64,000 nt of DNA from Pristiophorus japonicus (GCF_044704955.1 NW_027253631.1:1-64000); one strand, 5' to 3'; shown: positions 16,193-63,820, counted from the first letter of the stretch. Translations and numbers: made by a program. Notes: generated by a model not told the origin, from the letters alone.

Positions 16193-17288
16193 ATTATTGG
16201 GAAAGCGGGTTGTGTAGAGGACACAGAGAGGCTGCAAAGAGATTGAGATAGGTTAAGCGAATGGGCTAAGGTTTGGCAGATGGAATACAATGTCGGAAAG
16301 TGTGAGGTCATCCACCTTGGGGAAAAAACAGTAAAAGGGAATATTATTTGAATGGGGAGAAATTACAACATGCTGCGGTGCAGAGGGACCTGGGGGTCCT
16401 TGTGCATGAAACTCTTTTAGAAAAACATGTCTGTGTTGAAAGGTGTGGGACGTTATTCCACCTCTCTCAGAATCAGGTTTGGTTAAACTGTGAAACGGAA
16501 TGAAAAATGCTGAGAATCGTAGTGTGCATGAAACTCTTTTGAGTTTCATGCACACTACGATTCTCAGCATTTTTCATTCCGTTTCCCAAAAAGTTAGTTT
16601 GCAGGTGCAGCAGATAATCAGGAAGGCGAATGGAATGTTGGCCTTCATTGCGAGAGGGATGGAGTACAAAAGCAGGGAGGTCCTGCTGCAACTGTACAGG
16701 GTATTGGTGAGGCCGCACCTGGAGTACTGCGTGCAGTTTTACTCACCTTACTTAAGGAAAGATATACTAGCTTTGGAGGGGGTACAGAGACGATTCACTA
16801 GGCTGATTCCGGAGATGAGGGGGTTACCTTATGATGATAGATTGAGTAGACTGGGTCTTTACTTGTTGGAGTTCAGAAGGATGAGGGGTGATCTTATAGA
16901 AACATTTAAAATAATGAAAGGGATAGACAAGATAGAGGCAGAGAGGTTGTTTCCACTGGTCGGGGAGACTAGAACTAGGGGGCACAGCCTCAAAATACGG
17001 GGGAGACAATTTAAAACCGAGTTGAGAAGGAATTTCTTCTCCCAGAGGGTTGTGAATCTGTGGAATTCTCTGCCCAAGGAAGCAGTTGAGGCTAGCTCAT
17101 TGAATGTATTCAAGTCACAGATAGATAGATTTTTAACCAATAAGGGAATTAAGGGTTACGGGGAGCGGGCGGGTAAGTGGAGCTGAGTCCACGGCCAGAT
17201 CAGCCATGATCTTGTTGAATGGTGGAGCAGGCTCGAGGGGCTAGATGGCCTACTCCTGATCCTAATTCTTATGTTCTTATGTTCTTAT
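16193..17288 (+). mobile_element. CR1 family A 3' part carrying a 173-nt insert at 16411-16583
   Basis: Near-identical to the 3' part of the 5057-6842 copy apart from the insert; (TTCTTATG)n tail. Confidence 0.95.
16492..16585. repeat. Perfect 45-bp inverted repeat with TTTT loop
   Basis: 16492-16536 is the exact reverse complement of 16541-16585. Confidence 0.97.
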
Positions 17289-18380
17289 TACCAGATTACA
17301 CCCCCCCCCCCCGCCAGGAGGTTACCCCTCCCCCAATCAGGGGCACAGGGGAGCAACGCCCCCATCTTGCATTTCTTGGCTTGTAAATTGACGGAGAAAA
17401 CATAATCAGAACGTCAGGGATCCACCCGAGCCGTTTTGGATCCACTCGCTGTAACCCTGAACAACAGATCCCCAGCGGGGACTGCAATGGGGCTGAGCGA
17501 CATGTTAATAAAAATGCAATCCCTGCTTTGTGAAATGCAGCGAGAGATGCAGACTGCTGAGTGAAATGGGAGAAATGCTGGTTTGCTCAGAGCCCCCATG
17601 TAGGGCTGTGCATCGATCTGTGACATCGAGCACACACTGAGGCAATGAGGACCCCTCCTCACCATTCACAGCGAGCCCAGTGTCCAATCTCTCCATGGTC
17701 TCACCTCTCCCTCATCTCTCTATCCTTCTCCAGCCCTACAGCCCCTCCGGGAACCCTGCATTCCTCAACTCTGGCCTCTTGTACATCCTGCACTCCCATC
17801 GCCCCAAAACTGTCAGCCACCCGTGGCTTCAGCCCCGTGTCTGGGCCCGAACCTCAGGAACTCCCTCCTAAACCTCATGGCTTGTCACCCTCTCTCTCCC
17901 TGGGACACAGCCTGCCCCGTGACCCAGCTTTTGGTCACTCTCCTTCTTTCTCCTGCTTCACAATATTCCCACATTACAACACTGACTACAGACAGTGCTT
18001 CATTGGCTGGAAAGCGCTTTGAGGCGTCCGGTGCTGGTGACAGGCGCTATATAAATGCAAGTCTTTCCTTCCTTTGGCTCGGTGACAATTTTTGTCTGCG
18101 TCAATTTGAACGGGAATACCTCCACAACACAGTTATAATATACATGTTCTAAACCATCACATATTTAAAATTCATCAAAAGGAAATGTAATTATTAAAAA
18201 CAAAAATTTAATTTTTTGAAAAATAAATTTACATATTTTAAAGGGTCCACAAATAAACTTACCTTATTTAATAGGATTTTAAATGTTTAAATTATTGAAA
18301 ATGCATTTTTCTGTCCTTTAAAAGTCTTATGCTGATTAAAGCAGGCCTTACACCTGCTTCTATCACTTGGAAAAATTGTT

Positions 18381-18725
18381 GGGCCTGGGGCAGGGGGCCA
18401 GGGGCAGGGGGCCAGGGGCCGGGGCAGGGTCAGGAGCCGGGGCAGAGGGCCAGGGCCCGGGGCAGGGTCAGGAGCCGGGGCAGAGGGCCGGGGCAGGGGG
18501 CCTGGGGCAGAGGGCCAGGGCCTGGGGCAGGGTCAGGGTCAGGGGCTGGGGGCCAGGTCAGGGCCTGGGGCAGGGTCAGGGTCAGGGGCAGGGTCAGGGT
18601 CAGGGTCAGGGGCAGAGGGGCAGGGGCAGGGTCAGGGGCAGGGTCAGGGGGCAGGGGCAGGGGCAGGGTCAGGGTCAGGGGGCAGGGTCAGGGTCAGGGG
18701 GCAGGGTCAGGGGCAGGGCAGGCAG
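18381..18725. repeat. GGGGCA/GGGTCA hexamer repeat (G4-prone)
   Basis: Direct reading. Confidence 0.9.
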
Positions 18726-19237
18726 CCCAACTATCTGCCCGCGGAGGCCCTTTATCCGGATGTGTGCGACCTGTGGCGAGGATTGCTGTGGGTTTGGGCA
18801 CACGCTGTGAATGCCTAAACCTGCAGCTCACACACCCTCGGGGCCAGTGACATCCTTCACACATTCCCCCTTTACACTGGTCTCTCACAGGACCATGGTC
18901 ACTTCAGTCACCCCGCAGCTCACTGCGTGTTCTGAGCGCTATTCACACACACACATTCACTGTGTGTCACAACTCAGGCAATGTTTACCCTGTGTATATG
19001 TAATCTCAACACTGGGAGAGGGAGGAGGCAGGATGGCCATCTCTGGGTCAGGATTGAAACCTTTAATGAGTACCGGGAATCACCCCCTCCGGCTGCAGAT
19101 TGAGCTGCTGTGTCAGCACAGTCTCTGTCTGACAGGACCGTGTCTTTGATTCATTTAAAGATCGTCTCTGTTCCTCTCCCCGGCATTTTGAACAGAAATG
19201 CTGTCGGATTGGGATTGGTCACATTGAGACTTGTCAC

Positions 19238-21445: not shown

Positions 21446-21765
21446 GAGCCTGCACGGTGCTGATGTTAAATGTTGCGGTTTTTGGAAGGTGCTCAGCCCC
21501 TGTCTTGCATCAGTGATCAAGTCTGGACATTGAACAGTTCCCAGTGACAGAGGCTCACCCATCATCAGCCCACACAGGGCCGCAATATTCCCCTTGTTAT
21601 TCCAAAATGATGATATTATTGGGCGAGAGACGCTTCATTCCGTTTACTCAGGGGGAGGAGAGGAGGGGAATTTATAAAACCACTTCCCAAACTTGAATTC
21701 CTTGTGATCATTGAGCTCCTGTCGTTGACTGATGTCAGTATCCGGGAGCTGGGTGAATGATACCG

Positions 21766-22324: not shown

Positions 22325-22449
22325 GGAACCCTTTCTATTTCTGCTACCCAGAGTTTTCATCCAAAACCTATCGGGTTGTGCAGGGCACCAGTCGGGCTGC
22401 TGTGTCCTTTCTCAGCAATGTGCCTCAGGAACAACATCATTAAAGACGC

Positions 22450-28197: not shown

Positions 28198-31100
28198 GGT
28201 GCAGGCAGTGTGAGCCCGTACCTTCACCATTCCCCCTCCATGGTGCAGTGTGAGACGTACCTTCACCATTCCCCCTCCATGGTGCAGTGTGAGACGTACC
28301 GACACCATTCCCCCTCCATGGTGCAGTGTGAGACGTACCGACACCATTCCCCCTCCATGGTGCAGGCAGTGTGAGACGTACTGACACCATTCCCCCTCCA
28401 TGGTGCAGTGTGAGACGTACCTTCACCATTCCCCCTCCATGGTGCAGTGTGAGCCCGTACCGACACCATTCCCCCTCCATGGTGCAGTGTGAGCCCGTAC
28501 CGACACCATTCCCCCTCCATGGTGCAGTGTGAGCCCGTACCGACACCATTCCCCCTCCATGGTGCAGTGTGAGCCCGTACCGACACCATTCCCCCTCCAT
28601 GGTGCAGGCAGTGTGAGACGTACCGACACCATTCCCCCTCCATGGTGCAGTGTGAGACGTACCGACACCATTCCCCCTCCATGGTGCAGTGTGAGCCCGT
28701 ACCGTCACCATTCCCCCTCCATGGTGCAGTGTGAGCCCGTACCGACACCATTCCCCCTCCATGGTGCAGGCAGTGTGAGACGTACCGACACCATTCCCCC
28801 TCCATGGTGCAGTGTGAGACGTACCGACACCATTCCCCCTCCATGGTGCAGTGTGAGACGTACTGACACCATTCCCCCTCCATGGTGCAGTGTGAGACGT
28901 ACCGACACCATTCCCCCTCCATGGTGCAGTGTGAGACGTACTGACACCATTCCCCCTCCATGGTGCAGTGTGAGACGTACCGACACCATTCCCCCTCCAT
29001 GGTGCAGTGTGAGACGTACCGACACCATTCCCCCTCCATGGTGCAGTGTGAGACGTACCGACACCATTCCCCCTCCATGGTGCAGTGTGAGACATACCGA
29101 CACCATTCCCTCTCCATGGTGCAGTGTGAGACGTACCGACACCATTCCCCCTCCATGGTGCAGTGTGAGACGTACCGTCACCATTCCCTCTCCATGGTGC
29201 AGGCAGTGTGAGACGTACCGACACCATTCCCTCTCCATGGTGCAGGCAGTGTGAGACGTACCGACACCATTCCCTCTCCATGGTGCAGTGTGAGACGTAC
29301 CGAAACCATTCCCCCTCCATGGTGCAGCGTGAGACGTACCGACACCATTCCCCCTCCATGGTGCAGTGTGAGACGTACCGACACCATTCCCCCTCCATGG
29401 TGCAGTGTGAGCCGTACCGACACCATTCCCCCTCCATGGTGCAGTGTGAGACGTACCGACACCATTCCCCCTCCATGGTGCAGTGTGAGACGTACCGACA
29501 CCATTCCCCCTCCATGGTGCAGTGTGAGACGTACCGACACCATTCCCCCTCCATGGTGCAGTGTGAGACGTACCGACACCATTCCCCCTCCATGGTGCAG
29601 TGTGAGACGTACCGACACCATTCCCCCTCCATGGTGCAGTGTGAGACGTACTGACACCATTCCCCCTCCATGGTGCAGTGTGAGACGTACCGACACCATT
29701 CCCCCTCCATGGTGCAGTGTGAGACGTACCTTCACCATTCCCCCTCCATGGTGCAGTGTGAGACGTACCGACACCATTCCCCCTCCATGGTGCAGTGTGA
29801 GCCGTACCGACACCATTCCCCCTCCATGGTGCAGTGTGAGACGTACTGACACCATTCCCCCTCCATGGTGCAGGCAGTGTGAGACGTACCGACACCATTC
29901 CCCCTCCACGGTGCAGTGTGAGCCGTACCGACACCATTCCCCCTCCATGGTGCAGTGTGAGCCCGTACCGACACCATTCCCTCTCCATGGTGCAGTGTGA
30001 GACGTACCGACACCATTCCCCCTCCATGGTGCAGTGTGAGACGTACCGACACCATTCCCCCTCCATGGTGCAGTGTGAGACGTACCGACACCATTCCCCC
30101 TCCATGGTGCAGTGTGAGACGTACTGACACCATTCCCCCTCCATGGTGCAGTGTGAGACATACCGACACCATTCCCCCTCCATGGTGCAGTGTGAGACGT
30201 ACCGACACCATTCCCCCTCCATGGTGCAGTGTGAGACGTACCGACACCATTCCCCCTCCATGGTGCAGTGTGAGACGTACCGACACCATTCCCCCTCCAT
30301 GGTGCAGTGTGAGACGTACCGACACCATTCCCGCTCCATGGTGCAGTGTGAGACGTACCGACACCATTCCCCCTCCATGGTGCAGTGTGAGACGTACCGA
30401 CACCATTCCCCCTCCATGGTGCAGTGTGAGCCCGTACCGTCACCATTCCCCCTCCATGGTGCAGTGTGAGACGTACCGACACCATTCCCCCTCCATGGTG
30501 CAGTGTGAGCCCGTACCGACACCATTCCCCCTCCATGGTGCAGTGTGAGCCCGTACTGACACCATTCCCCCTCCATGGTGCAGTGTGAGACGTACCGACA
30601 CCATTCCCCCTCCATGGTGCAGGCAGTGTGAGACGTACCGACACCATTCCCCCTCCATGGTGCAGTGTGAGACGTACCGACACCATTCCCCCTCCATGGT
30701 GCAGTGTGAGACGTACCTTCACCATTCCCCCTCCATGGTGCAGTGTGAGACGTACCGACACCATTCCCCCTCCATGGTGCAGTGTGAGACGTACCGACAC
30801 CATTCCCCCTCCATGGTGCAGTGTGAGACGTACCGACACCATTCCCCCTCCATGGTGCAGCGTGAGACGTACCGACACCATTCCCCCTCCATGGTGCAGT
30901 GTGAGACGTACCGACACCATTCCCCCTCCATGGTGCAGTGTGAGACGTACTGACACCATTCCCCCTCCATGGTGCAGTGTGAGACGTACCGACACCATTC
31001 CCCCTCCATGGTGCAGTGTGAGACGTACCTTCACCATTCCCCCTCCATGGTGCAGTGTGAGACGTACCGACACCATTCCCCCTCCATGGTGCAGTGTGAG

Positions 31101-34100
31101 CCGTACCGACACCATTCCCCCTCCATGGTGCAGTGTGAGACGTACTGACACCATTCCCCCTCCATGGTGCAGGCAGTGTGAGACGTACCGACACCATTCC
31201 CCCTCCACGGTGCAGTGTGAGCCGTACCGACACCATTCCCCCTCCATGGTGCAGTGTGAGCCCGTACCGACACCATTCCCTCTCCATGGTGCAGTGTGAG
31301 ACGTACCGACACCATTCCCCCTCCATGGTGCAGTGTGAGACGTACCGACACCATTCCCCCTCCATGGTGCAGTGTGAGACGTACCGACACCATTCCCCCT
31401 CCATGGTGCAGTGTGAGACGTACTGACACCATTCCCCCTCCATGGTGCAGTGTGAGACATACCGACACCATTCCCCCTCCATGGTGCAGTGTGAGACGTA
31501 CCGACACCATTCCCCCTCCATGGTGCAGTGTGAGACGTACCGACACCATTCCCCCTCCATGGTGCAGTGTGAGACGTACCGACACCATTCCCCCTCCATG
31601 GTGCAGTGTGAGACGTACCGACACCATTCCCGCTCCATGGTGCAGTGTGAGACGTACCGACACCATTCCCCCTCCATGGTGCAGTGTGAGACGTACCGAC
31701 ACCATTCCCCCTCCATGGTGCAGGCAGTGTGAGACGTACCGACACCATTCCCCCTCCATGGTGCAGTGTGAGACGTACCGACACCATTCCCCCTCCATGG
31801 TGCAGTGTGAGACGTACCTTCACCATTCCCCCTCCATGGTGCAGTGTGAGACGTACCAACAACATTCCCCCTCCATGGTGCAGTGTGAGACGTACCGACA
31901 CCATTCCCCCTCCATGGTGCAGTGTGAGACGTACCGACACCATTCCCCCTCCATGGTGCAGTGTGAGACGTACCGACACCATTCCCGCTCCATGGTGCAG
32001 TGTGAGACGTACCTTCACCATTCCCCCTCCATGGTGCAGTGTGAGACGTACCGACACCATTCCCCCTCCATGGTGCAGGCAGTGTGAGACGTACCGACAC
32101 CATTCACCCTCCATGGTGCAGTGTGAGCCCGTACCGACACCATTCCCCCTCCATGGTGCAGTGTGAGACGTACTGACACCATTCCCTCTCCATGGTGCAG
32201 TGTGAGACATACCGACACCATTCCCCCTCCATGGTGCAGTGTGAGACGTACCGACACCATTCCCCCTCCATGGTGCAGTGTGAGACGTACCGACACCATT
32301 CCCCCTCCATGGTGCAGTGTGAGACGTACCGACACCATTCCCCCTCCATGGTGCAGGCAGTGTGAGACGTACCGACACCATTCCCCCTCCATGGTGCAGT
32401 GTGAGACGTACCGACACCATTCCCCCTCCATGGTGCAGTGTGAGACGTACCGACACCATTCCCCCTCCATGGTGCAGTGTGAGACGTACTGACACCATTC
32501 CCCCTCCATGGTGCAGTGTGAGACGTACCGACACCATTCCCCCTCCATGGTGCAGTGTGAGACGTACCGACACCATTCCCCCTCCATGGTGCAGTGTGAG
32601 CCCGTACCGACACCATTCCCCCTCCATGGTGCAGTGTGAGACGTACCGACACCATTCCCCCTCCATGGTGCAGTGTGAGACGTACCGACACCATTCCCCC
32701 TCCATGGTGCAGTGTGAGACGTACCGACACCATTCCCCCTCCATGGTGCAGTGTGAGACGTACCGACACCATTCCCCCTCCATGGTGCAGTGTGAGACGT
32801 ACCGACACCATTCCCTCTCCATGGTGCAGTGTGAGACGTACCGACACCATTCCCCCTCCATGGTGCAGTGTGAGACGTACCGACACCATTCCCCCTCCAT
32901 GGTGCAGTGTGAGACGTACCGACACCATTCCCCCTCCATGGTGCAGTGTGAGACGTACCGACACCATTCCCCCTCCATGGTGCAGGCAGTGTGAGACGTA
33001 CCGACACCATTCCCCCTCCATGGTGCAGTGTGAGACGTACCGACACCATTCCCCCTCCATGGTGCAGTGTGAGACGTACCGACACCATTCCCCCTCCATG
33101 GTGCAGGCAGTGTGAGACGTACCGACACCATTCCCCCTCCATGGTGCAGTGTGAGACGTACCGACACCATTCCCCCTCCATGGTGCAGTGTGAGACGTAC
33201 CGACACCATTCCCTCTCCATGGTGCAGTGTGAGACGTACCGACACCATTCCCCCTCCATGGTGCAGTGTGAGACGTACCGACACCATTCCCCCTCCATGG
33301 TGCAGTGTGAGACGTACCGACACCATTCCCCCTCCATGGTGCAGTGTGAGACGTACCGACACCATTCCCCCTCCATGGTGCAGTGTGAGACGTACCGACA
33401 CCATTCCCCCTCCATGGTGCAGTGTGAGACGTACCGACACCATTCCCCCTCCATGGTGCAGTGTGAGACGTACCGACTCCATTCCCCCTCCATGGTGCAG
33501 TGTGAGACGTACCGACACCATTCCCTCTCCATGGTGCAGGCAGTGTGAGACGTACCGACACCATTCCCCCTCCATGGTGCAGTGTGAGACGTACCGACAC
33601 CATTCCCTCTCCATGGTGCAGGCAGTGTGAGACGTACCGACACCATTCCCCCTCCATGGTGCAGTGTGAGACGTACCGACACCATTCCCTCTCCATGGTG
33701 CAGGCAGTGTGAGACGTACCGACACCATTCCCCCTCCATGGTGCAGGCAGTGTGAGACGTACCGACACCATTCCCCCTCCATGCTGCAGGCAGTGTGAGA
33801 CGTACCGACACCATTCCCCCTCCATGGTGCAGTGTGAGACGTACCGACACCATTCCCCCTCCATGGTGCAGTGTGAGACGTACTGACACCATTCCCCCTC
33901 CATGGTGCAGTGTGAGACGTACCGTCACCATTCCCCCTCCATGGTGCAGGCAGTGTGAGACGTACCGACACCATTCCCCCTCCATGGTGCCGTGTGAGAC
34001 GTACCGACACCATTCCCCCTCCATGGTGCAGTGTGAGACGTACCGACACCATTCCCCCTCCATGGTGCAGTGTGAGACGTACCGACACCATTCCCCCTCC

Positions 34101-37100
34101 ATGGTGCAGGCAGTGTGAGACGTACCGACACCATTCCCCCTCCATGGTGCAGTGTGAGACGTACCGTCACCATTCCCCCTCCATGGTGCAGGCAGTGTGA
34201 GACGTACCGACACCATTCCCCCTCCATGGTGCAGGCAGTGTGAGACGTACCGACACCATTCCCCCTCCATGGTGCAGGCAGTGTGAGACGTACCGTCACC
34301 ATTCCCCCTCCATGGTGCAGTGTGAGACGTACCGACACCATTCCCCCTCCATGGTGCAGTGTGAGACGTACCGACACCATTCCCCCTCCATGGTGCAGTG
34401 TGAGACGTACCGACACCATTCCCCCTCCATGGTGCAGTGTGAGACGTACCGACACCATTCCCCCTCCATGGTGCAGGCAGTGTGAGACGTACCGACACCA
34501 TTCCCCCTCCATGGTGCAGTGTGAGACGTACCGACACCATTCCCCCTCCATGGTGCAGTGTGAGACGTACCGACACCATTCCCCCTCCATGGTGCAGTGT
34601 GAGACGTACCGTCACCATTCCCCCTCCATGGTGCAGGCAGTGTGAGACGTACCGACACCATTCCCCTCCATGGTGCAGGCAGTGTGAGACGTACCGACAC
34701 CATTCCCCCTCCATGGTGCAGTGTGAGACGTACTGACACCATTCCCCCTCCATGGTGCAGTGTGAGACGTACCGACACCATTCCCCCTCCATGGTGCAGG
34801 CAGTGTGAGACGTACCGACACCATTCCCCCTCCATGGTGCAGTGTGAGACGTACCGACACCATTCCCCCTCCATGGTGCAGTGTGAGACGTACCGACACC
34901 ATTCCCCCTCCATGGTGCAGTGTGAGACGTACCGACACCATTCCCCCTCCATGGTGCAGTGTGAGACGTACCGACACCATTCCCCCTCCATGGTGCAGTG
35001 TGAGACGTACCGACACCATTCCCCCTCCATGGTGCAGTGTGAGACGTACCGACACCATTCCCCCTCCATGGTGCAGTGTGAGACGTACCGACACCATTCC
35101 CCCTCCATGGTGCAGTGTGAGACGTACCGACACCATTCCCCCTCCATGGTACAGTGTGAGACGTACCGACACCATTCCCCCTCCATGGTGCAGTGTGAGA
35201 CGTACCGACACCATTCCCCCTCCATGGTGCAGTGTGAGACGTACCGACACCATTCCCCCTCCATGGTGCAGTGTGAGACGTACCGACACCATTCCCCCTC
35301 CATGGTGCAGTGTGAGACGTACCGACACCATTCCCCCTCCATGGTGCAGTGTGAGACGTACCTTCACCATTCCCCCTCCATGGTGCAGTGTGAGACGTAC
35401 CGACACCATTCCCCCTCCATGGTGCAGTGTGAGACGTACCGACACCATTCCCCCTCCATGGTGCAGTGTGAGACGTACCGACACCATTCCCCCTCCATGG
35501 TGCAGTGTGAGCCCGTACCGACACCATTCCCCTTCCATGGTGCAGTGTGAGACGTACCGACACCATTCCCCTTCCATGGTGCAGTGTGAGCCCGTACCGA
35601 CACCATTCCCCCTCCATGGTGCAGTGTGAGCCCGTACCGTCACCATTCCCCCTCCATGGTGCAGTGTGAGACGTACCGACACCATTCCCCCTCCATGGTG
35701 CAGTGTGAGACGTACCGACACCATTCCCTCTCCATGGTGCAGTGTGAGACGTACCGACACCATTCCCCCTGCATGGTGCAGTGTGAGACGTACCGACACC
35801 ATTCCCCCTCCATGGTGCAGGCAGTGTGAGACGTACCGACACCATTCCCCCTCCATGGTGCAGTGTGAGACGTACCGTCACCATTCCCCCTCCATGGTGC
35901 AGTGTGAGACGTACCAACACCATTCCCCCTCCATGGTGCAGGCAGTGTGAGACGTACCGACACCATTCCCCCTCCATGGTGCCGTGTGAGACGTACCGAC
36001 ACCATTCCCCCTCCATGGTGCAGTGTGAGACGTACCGACACCATTCCCCCTCCATGGTGCAGTGTGAGACGTACCGACACCATTCCCCCTCCATGGTGCA
36101 GTGTGAGACGTACCGACACCATTCCCCCTCCATGGTGCAGTGTGAGACGTACCGACACCATTCCCCCTCCATGGTGCAGTGTGAGACGTACCGACACCAT
36201 TCCCCCTCCATGGTGCAGTGTGAGACGTACCGACACCATTCCCCCTCCATGGTGCAGGCAGTGTGAGACGTACCGACACCATTCCCCCTCCATGGTGCAG
36301 TGTGAGACGTACCGACACCATTCCCCCTCCATGGTGCAGTGTGAGACGTACCGACACCATTCCCTCTCCATGGTGCAGTGTGAGACGTACCGACACCATT
36401 CCCCCTCCATGGTGCAGTGTGAGACGTACCGACACCATTCCCCCTCCATGGTGCAGTGTGAGACGTACCGACACCATTCCCCCTCCATGGTGCAGTGTGA
36501 GACGTACCGACACCATTCCCCCTCCATGGTGCAGTGTGAGACGTACCGACACCATTCCCCCTCCATGGTGCAGTGTGAGACGTACCGACACCATTCCCCC
36601 TCCATGGTGCAGTGTGAGACGTACCGAATCCATTCCCCCTCCATGGTGCAGTGTGAGACGTACCGACACCATTCCCTCTCCATGGTGCAGGCAGTGTGAG
36701 ACGTACCGACACCATTCCCCCTCCATGGTGCAGTGTGAGATGTACCGACACCATTCCCTCTCCATGGTGCAGGCAGTGTGAGACGTACCGACACCATTCC
36801 CCCTCCATGGTGCAGTGTGAGACGTACCGACACCATTCCCTCTCCATGGTGCAGGCAGTGTGAGACGTACCGACACCATTCCCCCTCCATGGTGCAGGCA
36901 GTGTGAGACGTACCGACACCATTCCCCCTCCATGCTGCAGGCAGTGTGAGACGTACCGACACCATTCCCCCTCCATGGTGCAGTGTGAGACGTACCGACA
37001 TCATTCCCCCTCCATGGTGCCGTGTGAGACGTACCAACACCATTCCCCCTCCATGGTGCAGTGTGAGACGTACCGACACCATTCCCCCTCCATGGTGCAG

Positions 37101-40100
37101 TGTGAGACGTACTGTCACCATTCCCCCTCCATGGTGCAGGCAGTGTGAGACGTACCGACACCATTCCCCCTCCATGGTGCCGTGTGAGACGTACCGACAC
37201 CATTCCCCCTCCATGGTGCAGTGTGAGACGTACCGACACCATTCCCCCTCCATGGTGCAGTGTGAGACGTACCGACACCATTCCCCCTCCATGGTGCAGG
37301 CAGTGTGAGACGTACCGACACCATTCCCCCTCCATGGTGCAGGCAGTGTGAGACGTACCGACACCATTCCCCCTCCATGGTGCAGGCAGTGTGAGACGTA
37401 CCGACACCATTCCCCCTCCATGGTGCAGGCAGTGTGAGACGTACCGTCACCATTCCCCCTCCATGGTGCAGTGTGAGACGTACCGTCACCATTCCCCCTC
37501 CATGGTGCAGGCAGTGTGAGACGTACCGACACCATTCCCCCTCCATGGTGCAGGCAGTGTGAGACGTACCGACACCATTCCCCCTCCATGGTGCAGTGTG
37601 AGACGTACTGACACCATTCCCCCTCCATGGTGCAGTGTGAGACGTACCGACACCATTCCCCCTCCATGGTGCAGTGTGAGACGTACCGACACCATTCCCC
37701 CTCCATGGTGCAGTGTGAGACGTACCGACACCATTCCCTCTCCATGGTGCAGTGTGAGACGTACCGACACCATTCCCCCTCCATGGTGCAGTGTGAGACG
37801 TACCGACACCATTCCCCCTCCATGGTGCAGTGTGAGACGTACCGACACCATTCCCCCTCCATGGTGCAGTGTGAGACGTACCGACACCATTCCCCCTCCA
37901 TGGTGCAGTGTGAGACGTACCGTCACCATTCCCCCTCCATGGTGCAGTGTGAGACGTACCGACACCATTCCCCCTCCATGGTGCAGTGTGAGACATACCG
38001 ACACCATTCCCCCTCCATGGTGCAGTGTGAGACGTACCGACACCATTCCCCCTCCATGGTGCAGTGTGAGACGTACCGACACCATTCCCCCTCCATGGTG
38101 CAGTGTGAGACGTACCGACACCATTCCCCCTCCATGGTGCAGGCAGTGTGAGACGTACCGACACCATTCCCCCTCCATGGTGCAGTGTGAGACGTACCGA
38201 CACCATTCCCCCTCCATGGTGCAGTGTGAGACGTACCGACACCATTCCCCCTCCATGGTGCAGTGTGAGACGTACCGACACCATTCCCCCTCCATGGTGC
38301 AGGCAGTGTGAGACGTACCGACACCATTCCCCCTCCATGGTGCAGGCAGTGTGAGACGTACCGACACCATTCCCCCTCCATGGTGCAGTGTGAGACGTAC
38401 CGACACCATTCCCCCTCCATGGTGCAGTGTGAGACGTACCGACACCATTCCCCCTCCATGGTGCAGTGTGAGACGTACCGACACCATTCCCCCTCCATGG
38501 TGCAGTGTGAGACGTACCGACACCATTCCCTCTCCATGGTGCAGTGTGAGACGTACCGACACCATTCCCCCTCCATGGTGCAGTGTGAGACGTACCGACA
38601 CCATTCCCCCTCCATGGTGCAGTGTGAGACGTACCGACACCATTCCCCCTCCATGGTGCAGTGTGAGACGTACCGACACCATTCCCCCTCCATGGTGCAG
38701 TGTGAGACGTACCGTCACCATTCCCCCTCCATGGTGCAGTGTGAGACGTACCGACACCATTCCCCCTCCATGGTGCAGTGTGAGACGTACCGACACCATT
38801 CCCCCTCCATGGTGCAGTGTGAGACGTACCGACACCATTCCCCCTCCATGGTGCAGTGTGAGACGTACCGACACCATTCCCCCTCCATGGTGCAGTGTGA
38901 GACGTACCGACACCATTCCCTCTCCATGGTGCAGTGTGAGACGTACTGACACCATTCCCCCTCCATGGTGCAGTGTGAGACGTACCGACACCATTCCCCC
39001 TCCATGGTGCAGGCAGTGTGAGACGTACCGACACCATTCCCCCTCCATGGTGCAGTGTGAGACGTACCGACACCATTCCCCCTCCATGGTGCAGTGTGAG
39101 ACGTACCGACACCATTCCCCCTCCATGGTGCAGTGTGAGACGTACCGACACCATTCCCCCTGCATGGTGCAGTGTGAGACGTACCGACACCATTCCCCCT
39201 CCATGGTGCAGGCAGTGTGAGACGTACCGACACCATTCCCCCTCCATGGTGCAGTGTGAGACGTACCGTCACCATTCCCCCTCCATGGTGCAGTGTGAGA
39301 CGTACCGACACCATTCCCCCTCCATGCTGCAGGCAGTGTGAGACGTACCGACACCATTCCCCCTCCATAGTGCCGTGTGAGACGTACCGACACCATTCCC
39401 CCTCCATGGTGCAGTGTGAGACGTACCGACACCATTCCCCCTCCATGGTGCAGTGTGAGACGTACCGACACCATTCCCCCTCCATGGTGCAGTGTGAGAC
39501 GTACCGACACCATTCCCCCTCCATGGTGCAGTGTGAGACGTACCGACACCATTCCCCCTCCATGGTGCAGTGTGAGACGTACCGACACCATTCCCCCTCC
39601 ATGGTGCAGGCAGTGTGAGACGTACCGACACCATTCCCCCTCCATGGTGCAGTGTGAGACGTACCGACACCATTCCCCCTCCATGGTGCAGTGTGAGACG
39701 TACCGACACCATTCCCCCTGCATGGTGCAGTGTGAGACGTACCGACACCATTCCCCCTCCATGGTGCAGGCAGTGTGAGACGTACCGTCACCATTCCCCC
39801 TCCATGGTGCAGTGTGAGACGTACCGACACCATTCCCCCTCCATGGTGCAGTGTGAGACGTACCGACACCATTCCCCCTCCATGGTGCAGGCAGTGTGAG
39901 ACGTACCGACACCATTCCCCCTCCATGGTGCCGTGTGAGACGTACCGACACCATTCCCCCTCCATGGTGCAGTGTGAGACGTACCGACACCATTCCCCCT
40001 CCATGGTGCAGTGTGAGACGTACCGACACCATTCCCCCTCCATGGTGCAGTGTGAGACGTACCGACACCATTCCCTCTCCATGGTGCAGTGTGAGACGTA

Positions 40101-40479
40101 CCGACACCATTCACCCTCCATGGTGCAGTGTGAGCCCGTACCGACACCATTCCCCCTCCATGGTGCAGTGTGAGACGTACCGACACCATTCCCCCTCCAT
40201 GGTGCAGTGTGAGACGTACCGACACCATTCCCCCTCCATGGTGCAGTGTGAGACGTACCGACACCATTCCCCCTCCATGGTGCAGTGTGAGACGTACCGT
40301 CACCATTCCCCCTCCATGGTACAGTGTGAGACGTACCGTCACCATTCCCCCTCCATGGTACAGTGTGAGACGTACCGACACCATTCACCCTCCATGGTGC
40401 AGTGTGAGACGTACCGACACCATTCCCCCTCCATGGTGCAGTGTGAGACGTACCGACACCATTCCCCCTCCATGGTGCA
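28198..40479. repeat. 12.3-kb array of a 39-bp unit GTGTGAGACGTACCGACACCATTCCCCCTCCATGGTGCA (40- and 43-bp variants), roughly 310 copies
   Basis: Highly homogeneous tandem units in the CH1-CH2 intron. Confidence 0.98.
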
Positions 40480-47125: not shown

Positions 47126-47461
47126 CACGAGCGAGGACCCAATGGGTGGTATGACATCAGTCGCCCGTTACATACTTTCATTGACTTTAGACCCGAATAT
47201 CGGGCGTGTCATATCACGGGCGGTAGAGGCGATTCCGATGACATTACGTCTCCGCCCATTGTCCAATTTCAGGTGATTTCTCATTGCCCTGTATTGTGCC
47301 ACCATCAGCACCGCTGGTGTCCCGGGGATAGAGTGTGGGGCACAGGACTCCGTACCGCTTCTATTGCTCAACAGCCTCCCACATTGCTGGTCACATTTCC
47401 TCGTCCAGTTTCACCCCCGACACCAGTGCAGTTTTAAATGGCCAATCATGTCTGTACGCAC

Positions 47462-47782
47462 TTTTAGGTCCAGGTTCTGGGGTCTGAGCCGGCACCATTT
47501 CACTGGCCTTGTACCCCGCCTTGCAGTAGTAGACCCGATTGGTTTCCCAATCTGCTGAAGAGACTTTGAGCACACTGCTCATCGTGTACGCCATATTTTG
47601 CCCCAAGACAGCCGGATACTTCTTCACTCCAGTCGTGATGTCCGCACCATTGGTGGACCATGTCTGAATGATGCTCTTGGGCTGAAAGTCTTTGACCAGG
47701 CACAGGAAGGTGATCCCATCTTGGTTGGAGTTGCTGCCACAGGAAGGGTTGGCGATGTAGACAGATGGTTTGGACTGAACAA
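47462..47782 (-). CDS. IgW: IgW heavy chain constant exon CH1
   Basis: Acceptor tttaccttccAG and donor AAAA/GTgcgt; 321 nt, phase 1/1. Encodes (V)VQSKPSVYIANPSCGS..FLCLVKDFQP..QTW..YTMSSVL..YYCKAG..PEPGPK: C1-set Cys/Trp/Cys motifs plus the extra N-terminal Cys (PSCGS) typical of light-chain-pairing CH1. Confidence 0.92.
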
Positions 47783-47933
47783 CTGGAAGGTAAATAGGTG
47801 CACACAGATAAGTCCAGTAAACAAAGTGCATGACAGGCACACACAGCAGGAGAGATTGTGTTGTGTATAACACCAGCCATTTCCCCAAACAGTTACACTG
47901 CGACACAACCAGCTTACAGTTGTATTGTGGCTC

Positions 47934-48365
47934 ATAGAAACATAGAAACATAGAAATTAAGTGCAGGAGCAGGTCATTCGGCCCTTCGAGCCTGCACCAC
48001 CATCCAATAAGATCATGACTGATCATGCAACCTCAGTAACCTCTTTCCTGCTTTCTCTCCATACCCCTTGATCCCTTGAGCCGTAAGGGCCATATCTAAC
48101 GAACTGGCATCAACAACTTTCTACGGTCGCGAATTCCACAGGTTAACCACTCTGAGTGAAGCAGTTTCTCCTCATCTCGGTCCTAAATGGTTTCCCCTTA
48201 TTCTTAGAGAGTGACCCCTGGTTCTGGAACTACCCAGCAATGGGAACATTCTTCCTGCCTCGAACCTGTCGAATCCCGTCAGAAATTTATATGTTTCTAT
48301 GAGATGCCCTCTCATTTTTCTAAACTCCAGTGGATACAAGCCCAGTTGATCCAGTCTCTCCTCGT
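47934..48365 (-). mobile_element. CR1 family B 3' end, decayed
   Basis: (AGAAACAT)n tail; similar to 21766-22324. Confidence 0.85.
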
Positions 48366-48487: not shown

Positions 48488-50415
48488 TGATTAATGCAGT
48501 GACATTGATTGGGAGATTAATGCAGTGACATTGACTGGGAGATTAACGCAGTGGCATTGATTGGGAGATTAATGCACTGACATTGATTGGGAGATTAATG
48601 CAGTGACATTGATTGGGAGATTAATGCACTGACATTGACTGGGAGATTAACGCAGTGACATTGATTGGGAGATTAATGCACTGACATTGATTGGGAGATT
48701 AATGCACTGACATTGATTGGGAGATTAACGCACTGACATTGATTGGGAGATTAATGCAGTGACATTGGTTGGGAGATTAACGCACTGACAATTATAGCAG
48801 ATGCATTCGTTATAATCAACCAAAATTCTCTGGACTCTGGGGAGGTACCAGCGGATTGGAAAGCAGCTAATGTAACGCCTCTGTTTAAAAAATGGGGCAG
48901 ACAAAAGGCAGGTAACTATAGGCCAGTTAATTTAACATCTGTAGTGAGGAAAATGCTTGAAACCATCATTAAGGAAGAAATAGCAGGACATCTAGATAGG
49001 AATAGTGCAATCAAGCAGACGCAACATGGATTCATGAAGGGGAAATCATGTTTAACTAATTTACTTCTTTGAGGATATAACGAGAATGGTGGATAGAGAT
49101 GTACCGATGGATGTGGTGTATTTAGATTTCCAAAAGGCATTCGATAAGGTGCCACACAAAAGGTTACTGCAGAAGATAAAGGTACGCGGAGTCAGAGGAA
49201 ATGTATTAGCATGGATCGAGAATTGGCTGGCTAACAGAAAGCAGAGAGTCGGGATAAATGGGTCCTTTTCAGGTTGGAAATTGGTGGTTAGTGGTGTGCC
49301 ACAGGGATCGGTGCTGGGACCACAACTGTTTACAATATACATAGATGACCTGGAAGAGGGGACAGAGTGTAGCGCAACAAAATTTGCAGATGACACAAAG
49401 ATTAGTGGATAAGCGGGTTGTGTAGAGGACACAGAGGCTGCAAAGAGATTGAGATAGGTTAAGCGAATGGGCTAATGTTTGCCAGATGGAATACAATGTC
49501 GTAAAATGTGAGGTCATCCACCTTGGAAAACAAAACAGTAAAAGGGAATATTATTTGAATGGGGAGAAATTGCAACATGCTGCGGTGCAGAGGGACCTGG
49601 GGGTCCTTGTGCATGAATCCCAAAAAGTTAGTTTGCAGGTGCAGCAGGTAATCAGGAAGGCGAATGGAATGTTGGCCTTCATTGCGAGAGGGATGGAGTA
49701 CAAAGCAGGGAGGTCCTGCTGCAACTGTACAGGGTATTGGTGAGGCCGCACCTGGAGTACTGCGTGCAGTTTTGCTCACCTTACTTAAGGAAGGATATAC
49801 TAGCTTTGGAGGGGGTACAGAGACGATTTACTCGGCTGATTCCGGAGATGAGGGGGTTACCTTATGATGATAGATTGAGTAGACTGGGTCTTTAATCGTT
49901 GGAGTTCAGAAGGATGAGGGGTGATCTTATAGAAACATTTAAAAAAATGAAAGGGATAGACAAGATAAGAGGCAGAGAGGTTGTTTCCACTGGTCGGGGA
50001 GACTAGAACTAGGGGGCACAGCCTCAAAATACAGGGGAGCCAATTTAAAACTGAGTTGAGAAGGAATTTCTTCTCCCAGAGGGTTGTGAACCTGTGGAAT
50101 TCTCTGCCCAAGGAAGCAGTTGAGGCTAGCTCATTGAATGTATTCAAATCACAGATAGATAGATTTTTAACCAATAAGGGAATTAAGGGTTACGGGGAGC
50201 GGGCGGGTAAGTGGAACTGAGTCCACGGCCAGATCAGCCATGATCTTGTTGAATGGTGGAGCAGGCTCGAGGGGCTAGATGGCCTACTCCTGTTTCTAAT
50301 TCTTATGTTCTTATGTTCTTATGATTGGGAGATTAATGCACTGACATTGATTGGGAGATTAATGCACTGACATTGATTGGGAGATTAATGCGGTGACACT
50401 GATTGGGAGATTAAT
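48488..50415. repeat. 26-bp minisatellite GATTAATGCACTGACATTGATTGGGA split by a CR1 insertion
   Basis: Units at 48488-48790 resume at 50322-50415; preceded by a truncated SINE head (48366-48488). Confidence 0.9.
48791..50322 (+). mobile_element. CR1 family A, 5'-truncated
   Basis: RT motifs, several frameshifts and (TTCTTATG)n tail; uninterrupted GTGCATGAATCCC site (CATGAAT at 49612-49618). Confidence 0.95.
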
Positions 50416-57075: not shown

Positions 57076-57114
57076 AACCGTTTCTAATGCAAGACGATCA
57101 AGCTTGGTTAAAAA

Positions 57115-60650: not shown

Positions 60651-61619
60651 CTTTACACTGATGTCAATGGAATGCTAACTCAGACGGAGTGTGATACCAG
60701 CTGCTGATTTGCCATGAACCGATTTACTATACCACCCAAAGGCAATTACAGCTTTGTGGAATGAGACACAGGAGGAGACCGGTCAGCCAGCCATGCCTGG
60801 TCGAGCTCACAAATTAATCCCAGTCCCCTGCTTGTTCACCATAACCTTGTAAAAGGTTTTCACATGAAGTATTTATCCAATTCTCATTTAAAAGATACTG
60901 TGGAACCTGCTCCCACCGCCCTTTCACACATTGCGTTCCAGATCATAACAACTCGCTGTGTAAAACCTTTCCTTATTTACCCCAATATTGTCTCCAAAAG
61001 TTTCCCCACTGAAGTCAGGCTGACTGGCCTGTTGCTCCCTTATACCCTTCACCTGCTTTCTCAATTCATAGAAACATAGAAAATAGGTTCAGGAGTAGGC
61101 CATTCAGCCCTTCGAGCCTGCACCACCATTCAATAAGATCATGGCTGATCATTCCCTCAGTACCCCTTTCCTGCTTTCTCTCCATACCCCTTGATCCCTT
61201 TAGCCGTAAGGGCCACATCTAACTCCCTTTTGAATTTTAAAAACTGCTTCTTCCCCAAGGAAAACAAACTGAAGTGTCCTTAATTCCAACAATAAATCCC
61301 GAGATATTTTTAATATCCGTGCAATGCTGACTGAGGCTGTTCATTATACCGGATGGGCCTCATACACTACATTACCGTATGAGGTTGATGGGTGTTTTTG
61401 TGACTGGAAGGATGTTTCCAGTGGGGTTCCGCAGGGCTCAGTACTGGGTCCCTTGCTTTTTCTGGTATGTATCAATGATCGAGACTTAAATGTTGGGGGT
61501 ATGATTAAGAAGTTTGATACTAAAATTGGCCGTGTGGTTGATAATGAAGAAGAAAGCTGTGGACTGCAGGAAGATATCAATGTACTGGTCAGGTGGGCAG
61601 AACTGTGGCAAATGAAATA

Positions 61620-63820
61620 CAAATCAAAGCTTTTACCGATATATAAAACGGAAAAGAGTGACTAAAGTAAATGTTGGTCCTTTAGAAGATGAGAAGGGGG
61701 ATTTAATAATGGGAAATATGGAAATGGCTGAGACCTTAAACAATTATTTTGCTTCGGTCTTCACAGTGGAAGACACAAAAACCATGCCAGAAATTGCTGG
61801 TCACGGGAATGTGGGAAGGGAGGACCTTGAGATAATCACTATCACTAGGGGGGTAGTGCTGGACAGGCTAATGGATCTCAAGGTAGACAAGTCCCCTGCT
61901 CCTGATGAAATGCATCCCAGGGTATTAAAAGAGATGGCGGACGTTATAGCAGATGCATTGGTTATAATCTACCAAAATTCTCTGGACTCTGGGGAGGTAC
62001 CAGCGGATTGGAAAGCAGCTAATGTAACGCCTCTGTTTAAAAAAGGGGGCAGACAAAAGGCAGGTAACTATAGGCCGGTTAGTTTAACATCTGTAGTGGG
62101 GAAAATGCTTGAAACTATCATTAAAGAAGAAATAGCGGGACATCTAGATAGGAATAGTGCAATCAAGCAGACGCAGCATGGATTCATGAAGGGGAAATCA
62201 TGTTTAACTAATTTACTGGAATTCTTTGAGGATATAATGAGCATGATAGATAGAGGTGTACCGATGGATGTGGTGTATTTAGATTTCCAAAAGGCATTCG
62301 ATAAGGTGCCACACAAAAGGTTACTGCAGAAGATAAAGGTACGCGGAGTCAGGAAATGTAATAGCATGGATCGAGAATTGGCTGGCTAACAGAAAGTAGA
62401 CAGTCGGGATAAATGGGTCCTTTTCAGGTTGGAAATCAGTGGTTAGTGGTGTGCCACAGGGATCGGTGCTGGGACCACAACTGTTTACAATATACATAGA
62501 TGACCTGGAAGAGGGGACAGTGTAGTGCAACAAAATTTGAGAATGACACTAAGATTAGTGGGAAAGCGGGTTGTGTAGAGGACACAGAGAGGCTGCAAAG
62601 AGATTTAGATAGGTTAAGCAAATGGGCTAAGGTTTGGCAGATGGAATACAATGTCGGAAAATGTGAAGTCATCCACCTTGGAAAAAAAAACAGTAAAAGG
62701 GAATATTATTTGAATGGGGAGAAATTACAACATGCTGCGGTGCAGAGGGACCTGGGGGTCCTTGTGCATGAATTTTCTCTAAGATTCTTTTCCTATACCA
62801 TTCGCCTCCAACCTTCCTCTTTCTGCTCATAGCTCTTGTGATGCCAACCCTTCCACTGCAGCCAGGGTTCATCCAATTCAGGATCTAATCTTGGGGCTGC
62901 AAAGACTCCAACCAGGCACAAAGAAAGTACACAGTAGATCTTCATCCTTTCTTCTTTGCTCCCTGCCGCTCCCGGGCTACAATCTATCGTACTCGTGAGC
63001 GCCACCAGTTTTTATGGATCGCGTCATCCCCGCACTGATACATTTTCAGCACTGATTGGCTGGCCCATCCAGGCACGGACCACACCCAGTCACGAGATGC
63101 AGTGCTCAGAGTGTGCTGTCGATTCATGAATCCCAAAAAGTTAGTTTGCAGGTGCAGCAGGTAATCAGGAAGGCGAATGGAATGTTGACCTTCATTGCGA
63201 GAGGGATGGAGTACAAAAGCAGGGAGGTCCTGCTGCAACTGTATAGGGTATTAGTGAGGCTGCACCTGGAGTACTGCGTGCAGTTTTGTTCACCTTACTT
63301 AAGGAAGGATATACTAGCTTTGGAGGGGGTACAGAGACGATTCACTCGGCTGATTCCGGAGATGAGGGGGTTACCTTATGATGATAGATTGAGTAGACTG
63401 GGTCTTTACTCGTTGGAGTTCAGAAGGATGAGGGGTGATCTTATAGAAACATTTAAAATCATGAAAGGGATAGTCAAGATAGAGGCAGAGAGGTTGTTTC
63501 CACTGGTCGGGGAGACTAGAACTAGGGGGCACAGCCTCAAAATACGGGGGGGCCAATTTAAAACAGAGTTGAGAAGGAATTTCTTCTCCCAGAGTCTGTG
63601 GAATTCTCTGCTCAAGGAAGCAGTTGAGGCGAGCTCATTAAATGTATTCAAGTCACAGATAGATAGATTTTTAACCAATAAGGGAATAAGGGTTACGGGG
63701 AGCGGGTGGGTAAGTGGAGCTGAGTCCACGGCCAGATCAGCCATGATCTTGCTGAATGGCGGAGCAGGCTCGAGGGGCTAGATGGCCTACTCCTGTTCCT
63801 GATATGTTCTTCTGTTCTTA
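61620..63820 (+). mobile_element. CR1 family A carrying a 351-bp host-gene insert
   Basis: Colinear with the 5057-6842 copy except for 62774-63124. Confidence 0.95.
62774..63124 (-). pseudogene. CTSL: Cathepsin L-like 5' fragment (promoter-like motifs, 5' UTR, signal peptide, start of I29 propeptide), apparently processed
   Basis: ATG at 62945: MKIYCVLSLCLVGVFAAPRLDPELDEPWLQWKGWHHKSYEQKEEGWRRMV*EKNLR matches the cathepsin L EEGWRRxVWEKN motif with W changed to TAG. CATGAAT on both flanks. Confidence 0.85.

What the first reader, a model, noticed from the sequence alone, without database searches (positions are those of the whole stretch)
16401..63131. Same site of one CR1 family captured unrelated foreign sequence twice: candidate site-specific capture system
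Seen: four family A copies span CCTTGTGCATGAA^TCCCAAAAAG. Two are intact (CATGAAT at 6138-6144 and 49612-49618). Two are interrupted at this point by unrelated inserts: 16411-16583 (hairpin unit) and 62774-63124 (cathepsin L). In both, the LINE resumes with no loss of sequence. The left junction has homology to the donor (exact TGTGCATGAA inside insert 1; inferred from the K-I-x-x-H-N codons for insert 2), and the right side has fold-back symmetry. Inference: two independent hits at one position of a 1-2 kb element are unlikely by chance. The pattern fits a reproducible nick or pause where the LINE sense-strand 3' end primes on other templates containing TTCATGCACA-like sequence. The cause could be a sequence-specific endonuclease targeting this CR1, or a programmed second-strand template switch. 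Either way, copies of this family would act as dispersed traps recording fragments of cellular RNA while breaking ORF2. I know of no description of this in CR1, but could not search the literature.
Basis: partly seen in the sequence, partly recalled or inferred. Interest (0 to 1): 0.9.

Follow-up and report, generated by a model that had tools for sequence, protein, structure and literature searches.

The report
Recurrent retro-insertions at one CR1 site
Two copies of a very abundant shark jumping gene (CR1) carry unrelated reverse-transcribed inserts at the same bond, probably because another site-specific jumping gene cuts there; this is a by-product of a known habit, not a dedicated capture system.

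Summary
Four independent copies of one CR1 family span GTGCATGAA^TCCCAAAAAG. Two are intact. Two are interrupted at that bond with no loss of LINE sequence.

- **Insert 1 (16411-16583)** is not a foreign hairpin unit. It is a 112-nt piece flanked by a 10-nt repeat of the target (TGTGCATGAA), then a second start of the same piece (ACTCTTTT), then a perfect 45-nt snap-back.
- **Insert 2 (62774-63124)** is the antisense 5' part of a cathepsin L transcript, flanked by a 7-bp target duplication (CATGAAT).
- **A third event:** contigs of the same species hold LINE copies with only ACTCT at this bond, the first five letters of insert 1.

A fixed start, target duplications and re-use of the restored site are marks of target-primed reverse transcription at a nick made by a site-specific retroelement.

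Earlier scan notes report a Tx1-type LINE landing at one fixed site in CR1 ORF2 in many other windows of this genome. They also report a cathepsin L fragment inside CR1 on other pieces. I could not check that their site is this one.

No genome-wide breakpoint histogram could be made. Neither insert's junctions were confirmed by reads.

The parts
5054..6845 (+). CR1 family A copy 1. Site intact (TGTGCATGAA at 6134-6143, then TCCC). The copy splits a 39-bp minisatellite.
16192..16410 (+). CR1 family A copy 2, left part. It is 5'-truncated inside a 21-bp C-rich array and ends ...TGTGCATGAA.
16401..16410 (+). Left copy of the 10-nt target repeat TGTGCATGAA. It is the last 10 nt of the LINE before the bond.
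16411..16522 (-). 112-nt unit. I read it as a 5'-truncated retro-copy whose RNA 3' end is ...CTAAAAGAGT on the minus strand. On the + strand it starts ACTCTTTT directly after GAA.
   Evidence: Unique in the window. No Rfam family reached its gathering score. No special RNA fold.
16523..16532 (+). Right copy of the 10-nt target repeat TGTGCATGAA. This is the restored landing site.
16533..16540 (-). Second start of the same template: ACTCTTTT, identical to 16411-16418.
16541..16585 (+). Snap-back: the exact reverse complement of 16492-16536 with a 4-nt loop (TTTT). Its last two letters, TC, overlap the resuming LINE as microhomology.
   Evidence: 45/45 match; DNA fold -62.9 kcal/mol, z = -12.4
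16584..17284 (+). CR1 family A copy 2, right part. It resumes at TCCCAAAAAG with no loss and ends in (TTCTTATG)n.
48792..50318 (+). CR1 family A copy 3. Site intact (49608-49617). The copy splits a 26-bp minisatellite.
61700..62773 (+). CR1 family A copy 4, left part. The last 7 nt, CATGAAT (62767-62773), are the left copy of the target duplication.
62774..63124 (-). 351-nt insert: the 5' part of a cathepsin L transcript, antisense to the LINE. It has no poly(A) and no 3' part of the gene.
62796..62945 (-). Cathepsin L codons 1-50 (signal peptide and start of the propeptide). They are followed by an in-frame stop at 62793-62795, where relatives have W, and then by six more matching codons.
   Evidence: (E = 1.1e-5 to human procathepsin L)
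62823..62948 (-). Block that behaves as one exon. A DNA contig covers exactly this range with no differences. The one RNA-like contig listed covers 62832-62949 and does not match beyond 62949.
   Evidence: table 8 (records 4 and 18)
62950..63126 (-). Stretch upstream of the ATG, containing CCAAT- and TATA-like motifs. It lies on no listed RNA-like contig, and 62986-63062 has zero depth in both RNA-like runs. A non-LINE genomic locus is colinear with the window over 62963-63126 and differs beyond 63126.
   Evidence: table 2 (zero depth in X6 and X8 over 62986-63062) and table 8 (records 5 and 15)
63125..63822 (+). CR1 family A copy 4, right part. It starts with the right copy of CATGAAT (63125-63131).

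Best explanation
The bond GTGCATGAA^TCCC on the sense strand of this CR1 family is the first-strand nick site of a sequence-specific retroelement. That element is most likely the CR1-targeting Tx1-type LINE that this scan has noted elsewhere in this genome. Its endonuclease nicks the CR1 DNA. The freed 3' end ...TGTGCATGAA is then extended by reverse transcriptase (target-primed reverse transcription, TPRT).

- **Normal template.** The usual template is the element's own RNA, whose 3' end reads ...CTAAAAGAGT. The + strand therefore always continues ACTCTTTT... after GAA.
- **Insert 1** records two such events. The first is a copy truncated to 112 nt with a 10-bp target duplication, which restores the site. 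The second starts at the restored site, stops after 8 nt, folds back on its own strand for 45 nt, and is joined to TCCC through a 2-nt overlap.
- **The ACTCT variant** seen in other copies is the same reaction aborted after 5 nt, or a deletion derivative of it.
- **Insert 2** is the same nick extended on a cellular RNA instead. This is a cathepsin L transcript, primed internally and copied towards its 5' end, and it is sealed with a 6-7-bp target duplication.

Shown: the anatomy, the repeats, the shared ACTCT start and the cathepsin L identity. Inferred: the nick, the enzyme that makes it, the RNA nature of both templates, and the identity of this site with the Tx1 landing site in the earlier notes.
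For: - Same bond in 2 of 4 independent copies.
- Insert 1 parses exactly as TSD(10) - unit(112) - TSD(10) - same start(8) - perfect 45-nt self-copy.
- Contigs of the same species hold GAA+ACTCT+TCCC at mean word depth 330, against tens for the contigs on the cathepsin L insert. This is the same first 5 nt as insert 1 (table 5c).
- Insert 2 has a 7-bp TSD. Its cDNA-sense strand is joined to the same 3' end.
- Insert 2 runs on without interruption past a DNA contig end at 62823, after codon 41. From my own recall, the first coding exon ends about there in vertebrate cathepsin L genes (record 4). This indicates an RNA template.
- Insert 2 differs from the contigs laid on it at only 2 of about 270 positions. 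The LINE copies differ from each other by 3-4%. The insert is therefore younger than its host copy.
- The target letters are specific to family A. The 70%-identical CR1 family in the window reads differently there and is uninterrupted.
- Earlier notes, not verified here, describe a Tx1 LINE landing at one fixed 9-18-letter site in CR1 ORF2, stacking head to tail with the site restored each time, and a tRNA/Tx1 chimera at that site.
- Tx1-clade elements are known for target specificity, including targeting another transposon (PMC4494074).
Against: - No Tx1-type ORF or any other copy of the 112-nt unit is in the window. The unit's identity as a LINE 3' end is therefore unproven.
- The earlier notes give no letters, so site identity is untested. 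A look-up of the unit by sequence was blank.
- The top loose ends show no abundant foreign sequence joined at 62772/62773. Only about 6 rows per run were listed, out of more than 2,600.
- Insert 2 contains no LINE-derived tail, unlike classical template-switch chimeras.
- Whether the cathepsin L mRNA has complementarity to ...GTGCATGAA is unknown.
- 62950-63126 is not in the abundant mRNA. The template would therefore have to be an intron-1-retaining or alternative-promoter transcript.
- The unit's RNA has no notable fold.
Confidence: 0.5

Rival explanations
1. Break-prone site repaired with filler DNA. The bond lies next to short palindromes (GGACC..GGTCC and CATG). It breaks recurrently for structural reasons, and breaks are patched by end-joining that copies nearby or floating templates (polymerase-theta-type snap-back and loop-out synthesis, or capture of stray cDNA). 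No dedicated endonuclease is involved.
For: - Insert 1 as a whole has no target duplication. It contains both a direct and an inverted copy of adjacent sequence, and it is sealed with 2-nt microhomology. All of these are typical of templated end-joining.
- A 14-nt deletion flanked by TCC microhomology ends at the same bond in other copies (table 5).
- Capture of cDNA at breaks is established knowledge.
Against: - It does not explain why two events in insert 1 and the ACTCT variant all start with the same foreign letters.
- The 100 nt of unit 1 that is neither LINE nor local is unexplained.
- The 7-bp and 10-bp duplications indicate staggered nicks rather than blunt breaks.
- The stem next to the site is only 5 bp.
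Confidence: 0.17
2. Coincidence. Two unrelated insertions fell within a few bases of each other by chance in a scan of very many windows. The ACTCT variant is merely an allele or deletion derivative of the copy-2 locus.
For: - The prior chance is about 0.2-0.8% per pair, and hundreds of windows of this LINE-rich genome were read.
- The depth of the ACTCT contig may be inflated by LINE words, so it could be single-copy.
- The best DNA runs hold only about half of the words of the insert-1 region.
Against: - The internal 10-nt target repeat has a chance of about 1.6e-4.
- The same start is used twice inside insert 1.
- Insert 2 has a target duplication anchored on the same bond.
- Earlier notes report site-specific insertion into CR1 ORF2 in this genome.
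Confidence: 0.13
3. The CR1 family itself has a programmed pause or second-strand template switch at this position, so that copies trap cellular RNA fragments during or after their own retrotransposition.
For: Both inserts continue the LINE sense strand at the same nucleotide. The site lies just beyond the end of the RT domain match.
Against: - Insert 2 has a target duplication and is much less diverged than its host copy, so it entered existing DNA and not a nascent copy.
- Insert 1 shows re-use of a restored DNA site.
- The intact form dominates overwhelmingly among what are probably tens of thousands of copies.
Confidence: 0.08
4. Assembly artefact, at least for insert 1. The perfect palindrome and the repeat would be a long-read or assembler error at a shared word of a hyper-abundant repeat.
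For: - Perfect 45-bp arms.
- Only 0.50-0.54 of the sampled words are present in the best DNA runs.
- No junction-bridging piece was listed.
Against: - The LINE resumes exactly, with no loss, in the same copy.
- The structure has an orderly internal logic.
- The share of words held is above the 0.30 expected from the LINE flanks alone.
- The ACTCT start is seen independently in contigs.
- Insert 2 has a target duplication.
Confidence: 0.07

Closest known systems
Target-specific Tx1-clade LINEs (Tx1 in the Tx1D transposon of Xenopus; Keno in U2 snRNA genes; Kojima and Fujiwara 2004, as summarised in PMC4494074)
   Same: One exact landing site inside a multicopy sequence. A constant 3' junction with variable 5' truncation. 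Short target duplications. Repeated use of the restored site.
   Different: The target here would be the ORF2 of another LINE (CR1). No Tx1 coding sequence is present at these two sites, only a 112-nt tail-like piece and abortive products. Membership of the unit in a Tx1 family was not shown.
LINE-mediated chimeric retrocopies and template-switch products (U6/L1 chimeras, snRNA-Alu chimeras; Buzdin 2002 and Garcia-Perez 2007, cited in PMC4494074)
   Same: A cellular RNA is reverse-transcribed by LINE machinery at an endonuclease nick and ends up flanked by a target duplication.
   Different: Classical chimeras keep a LINE or poly(A) 3' part and add the cellular RNA at the 5' side. Insert 2 has no LINE part and no poly(A), and it starts inside the coding region of the mRNA.
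Processed pseudogenes
   Same: Target duplication, and at least one intron apparently missing.
   Different: Only the first ~350 nt of the transcript are present, with no 3' end and no poly(A). The insert also contains ~175 nt upstream of the ATG that the abundant mRNA lacks.
Templated sequence insertions and cDNA capture at double-strand breaks; polymerase-theta snap-back synthesis (from my own knowledge, not looked up here)
   Same: Short unrelated or locally templated filler, inverted self-copies, and microhomology at one junction. Insert 1 as a whole has no duplication.
   Different: The same foreign start is used three times at one bond, and staggered duplications of 7 and 10 bp are present.
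Helitron gene capture (insertion between A and T, hairpin near the 3' end)
   Same: The bond is A^T. Insert 1 has a hairpin at one end. Insert 2 carries a gene fragment.
   Different: Neither insert has the TC...CTRR termini. Insert 2 has a target duplication, which Helitrons do not make. The hairpin includes copied target letters.

Membership tests
Site-specific non-LTR retrotransposon insertion (Tx1 clade) | Insertions recur at one exact target sequence | tested here: met
   Two of four copies in the window are interrupted at the bond, and contigs of the same species hold an ACTCT variant there. A genome-wide rate was not obtained.
Site-specific non-LTR retrotransposon insertion (Tx1 clade) | Constant 3' junction with variable 5' truncation | tested here: met
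   ACTCTTTT follows GAA twice in insert 1, and ACTCT follows it in other copies. The lengths are 112, 8 and 5 nt.
Site-specific non-LTR retrotransposon insertion (Tx1 clade) | Target-site duplication from staggered nicks | tested here: met
   10 bp (TGTGCATGAA) around unit 1 and 7 bp (CATGAAT) around insert 2.
Site-specific non-LTR retrotransposon insertion (Tx1 clade) | The inserted sequence is the 3' end of an element that encodes an APE-type endonuclease and an L1/Tx1-type reverse transcriptase | not testable with these tools
   No such ORF and no second copy of the unit is in the window.
Site-specific non-LTR retrotransposon insertion (Tx1 clade) | Same landing site as the CR1-targeting Tx1 family noted earlier in this genome | not testable with these tools
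   The notes give no letters. They are compatible in ORF2 position, duplication length (9-18 letters) and stacking habit.
Processed pseudogene / retrocopy | Introns removed | tested here: inconclusive
   The coding sequence runs on past codon 41, where a DNA contig ends (62823). From my own recall, vertebrate cathepsin L genes have an intron about there. The gene of this species was not seen.
Processed pseudogene / retrocopy | Poly(A) tail and 3' end of the mRNA | tested here: not met
   The insert ends at about codon 57 with no A-run beyond AAAA.
Helitron | 5' TC and 3' CTRR termini, with no target duplication | tested here: not met
   Insert 1 runs ACTC...CCGTT and insert 2 runs TTTC...CGATT. 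Insert 2 has a 7-bp duplication.
Known structured RNA as donor of insert 1 | Match to an Rfam family at its gathering score | tested here: not met
   Only generic hairpin matches to miRNA precursor models, all below their gathering scores.

The most novel reading that the evidence does not exclude
The nick that a site-specific LINE makes in a CR1 family with probably tens of thousands of copies is regularly extended on cellular RNAs that happen to pair with ...GTGCATGAA. The CR1 copies of this genome would then hold a dispersed, datable collection of 5' fragments of germline-expressed transcripts, inserted without any LINE tail. That would be a class of orphan target-primed retrocopies not described for site-specific LINEs.
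Probability: 0.12. Interest if true: 0.65.

Novelty: new variant of a known kind. Interest (0 to 1): 0.42.

Why it matters
If the reading is right, these two loci show what happens when site-specific target-primed reverse transcription goes wrong in a vertebrate germline:
- extreme 5' truncation;
- re-nicking of the restored site;
- snap-back self-copying;
- use of a cellular mRNA instead of the element's own RNA.

Such by-products are rarely visible, because most LINE nick sites are not fixed. A fixed site in a hyper-abundant target makes them countable, and so gives a natural assay for template choice and the failure modes of a LINE reverse transcriptase. It also cautions that gene fragments inside LINEs need not mean a capture system.

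Tried and rejected
- **Rfam on insert 1**: only sub-threshold hairpin look-alikes.
- **BLAST of both inserts against the window**: no other copy.
- **Protein search with the frame that reads from CR1 into insert 1**: no candidate.
- **Exact look-up of six junction-spanning ORFs**: none is in the collection.
- **Earlier-findings look-ups** by sequence and by motif words: blank, or the words were filtered out. The letters of the Tx1 landing site could not be obtained.
- **Metagenome pattern scans.** The scan for the unit's start found nothing. The scan for the LINE site found two hits, both unrelated non-LINE sequence that matches by chance.
- **RNA fold of the unit**: not more stable than shuffles.
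- **Pfam on the cathepsin fragment**: no hit, because the fragment is too short. The PDB sequence search settled its identity instead.
- **Rejected readings.** Helitron: the termini do not fit and a TSD is present. A cryptic RAG signal at the site: the heptamer/nonamer spacing does not fit, judged by eye only. A programmed CR1-intrinsic switch: insert 2 is young and has a TSD.
- **Genome-wide breakpoint enrichment:** not testable. One search listed only the best-supported joints and loose ends, and every variant near the reference's own insert is listed as a joint, which biases towards the site.

Full report
The N runs at 142-1603 were left alone. The single calls allowed for the look-up of sequencing runs and read laying, and all eight look-ups of earlier findings, were used.

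**Observation.** The window is a minisatellite-rich stretch of a cartilaginous-fish-like genome. It holds four sense-strand copies of one CR1 family:
- c1: 5054-6845
- c2: 16192-16410 and 16584-17284
- c3: 48792-50318
- c4: 61700-62773 and 63125-63822

With the inserts taken out, the four copies are 96-97% identical in a star-like pattern. They are letter-for-letter the same for at least 60 nt on each side of GTGCATGAA^TCCCAAAAAG. Their 5' truncation points and flanks differ. c1 splits a 39-bp array, c2 a 21-bp C-rich array and c3 a 26-bp array, and all four copies end in TTCTTATG-type tail repeats (degenerate in c4). They are therefore four separate retrotransposition events. A second CR1 family in the window (70% identical, two copies) reads differently at the homologous place and is uninterrupted. 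The site lies in ORF2 (codons V-H-E-S), some 20 residues past the end of a weak RVT_1 match.

**Insert 1 (16411-16583).** A script parse gives this order:
- LINE ending in TGTGCATGAA (16401-16410)
- a 112-nt unit starting ACTCTTTT (16411-16522)
- TGTGCATGAA again (16523-16532)
- ACTCTTTT again (16533-16540)
- 45 nt that are the exact reverse complement of 16492-16536 (16541-16585)
- the LINE resuming at TCCC, with the last two letters of the snap-back (TC) shared with the LINE

The fold is extreme: -62.9 kcal/mol, z = -12.4. This is because it is a self-copy, not because the donor is a hairpin RNA. Rfam gives only generic hairpin look-alikes below threshold. The unit on its own has no notable fold and no second copy in the window. 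A 10-nt copy of the target inside the insert has a chance of about 1.6e-4. It reads naturally as a target-site duplication: one short insertion with a 10-bp duplication, then a second event at the restored site that started on the same template, stalled after 8 nt and copied back along its own strand.

**Insert 2 (62774-63124).** It is flanked by CATGAAT on both sides (62767-62773 and 63125-63131). The minus strand encodes MKIY...GWRRMV, which aligns with residues 9-51 of human preprocathepsin L (E = 1.1e-5). A stop stands where relatives have W, followed by EKNLRE. There is no poly(A) and no 3' part of the gene.

**Reads.** Runs of the same organism were found with the insert-1 region. The best DNA runs hold 0.50-0.54 of its sampled words. 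That is more than the ~0.30 expected from the LINE flanks alone, but far from all. Contigs of two DNA runs and two unclassified runs were laid on 61600-63900.
- The LINE has enormous summed depth, about five orders of magnitude above the contigs on the cathepsin L insert. The intact junction (joint 62766>63125) dominates.
- X6 and X8 behave as RNA. The cathepsin exon reaches depth ~1,300-2,700 while 62986-63062 has none.
- A DNA contig covers exactly 62823-62948 with no differences. Its left end falls after codon 41. From my own recall, which I did not check here, the first coding exon ends about there in vertebrate cathepsin L genes. A de Bruijn contig that stops there suggests two continuations in the genome, intron and next exon. 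On that reading the insert lacks that intron and came from RNA.
- The one RNA contig listed matches 62832-62949 and then carries 17 unmatched letters. No RNA lies on 62986-63062. A 431-nt DNA contig matches 62963-63126 and then runs on for 267 nt unlike the window.
- The ~175 nt upstream of the ATG therefore exist at a non-LINE locus but are not in the abundant mRNA.
- This fits a transcript that keeps intron 1 or starts inside it. [quoted passage not shown] 2003).
- All DNA contigs read C where the window has T at 62957 and 62996. The contigs listed therefore come from the donor or from other copies, and they do not confirm this locus. The low divergence (2 in ~270) shows that the insert is younger than its host LINE, whose copies differ from each other by 3-4%.

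**A third event at the same bond.** Among the joints with extra letters, one contig class reads GAA + ACTCT + TCCC (table 5c; depth 330 in X3). ACTCT is the first five letters of insert 1. The chance of that is about 1e-3 per candidate. Contigs also show a 14-nt deletion (TCCTTGTGCATGAA, with TCC microhomology) that ends at the bond. I give this little weight. Because the reference itself carries an insert here, every small variant near the site is reported as a joint, and comparable variants elsewhere in the LINE were not listed.

**Mechanism.** Three features are the marks of target-primed reverse transcription at a sequence-specific nick on the CR1 sense strand between A and T: a fixed foreign start joined to one DNA 3' end, variable length, and staggered duplications of 10 and 7 bp with re-use of the restored site. 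The usual template would be an element whose RNA ends ...CTAAAAGAGT. Site-specific LINEs commonly use read-through RNA that pairs with the nicked target; this is established for R1-type elements and I state it from my own knowledge. Such pairing would explain how any RNA with a TTCATG(CACA)-like stretch could be used by mistake.

**Link to earlier notes.** The scan's notes describe a Tx1-type LINE in many other windows of this genome. It lands at one fixed 9-18-letter site in CR1 ORF2 and stacks head to tail with the site restored each time. The notes also describe a tRNA/Tx1 chimera at that site. Two further notes describe a cathepsin L 5' fragment inside a CR1 on other pieces of the assembly. 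These notes changed my reading from break repair to a LINE landing site. They give no sequence, however, and I could not show that their site is this one. Tx1-clade target specificity, including a transposon as target, is documented (PMC4494074).

**Rivals.**
- A structurally fragile site patched by templated end-joining explains the snap-back and the microhomology. It does not explain the thrice-used foreign start or the duplications.
- Pure coincidence is weakened by the internal target repeat and the ACTCT variant.
- A CR1-intrinsic programmed switch is contradicted by the young age and the target duplication of insert 2.
- An assembly artefact is unlikely for insert 2: it has a TSD, and earlier notes list cathepsin L fragments inside CR1 on other pieces. 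It cannot be excluded for the palindrome of insert 1.

**Verdict.** It is best explained as by-products of a site-specific retroelement's nick in CR1 copies (confidence about 0.5, limited by the untested link to the element). It is a new variant of a known kind. The novel element is a tail-less, internally primed cellular cDNA at a site-specific landing pad. There is no evidence for a dedicated capture system.

Noticed in passing
window 13559-14431 (-) and 47394-48026 (-): A 291-aa open frame holds two immunoglobulin constant-type domains in one frame (Pfam C1-set, 1.6e-32). The best solved relatives are Ig heavy chains and a cartilaginous-fish UrIg2. A second C1-set ORF lies 33 kb away. Two C domains without an intervening intron is unusual for an Ig heavy-chain gene.
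   Followed up: partly
window 1604-47125, e.g. 28205-40479: About half of the window is minisatellite arrays with units of 20-46 bp. One 39-bp unit is repeated 309 times. All four family-A CR1 copies sit inside or beside such arrays and end in (TTCTTATG)n, which suggests a landing preference for tandem repeats.
   Followed up: partly
window 62758-63131, from contigs: Other genomic copies of the LINE carry a 14-nt deletion (TCCTTGTGCATGAA, flanked by TCC) and a 6-nt deletion (CCTTGT) directly beside the same bond. This may be target-site truncation or plain slippage. The listing is biased towards this place.
   Followed up: no
window 62950-63126 (-): CCAAT- and TATA-like motifs lie upstream of the cathepsin L ATG inside the insert. 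The abundant mRNA does not cover them. This recalls the intron-1 promoter of the human gene.
   Followed up: partly
window 61600-63900, runs X6 and X8: The CR1 family is heavily represented in RNA-like runs, with depth rising towards the 3' end. Whether this is its own transcription or passenger copies in other transcripts was not examined.
   Followed up: no
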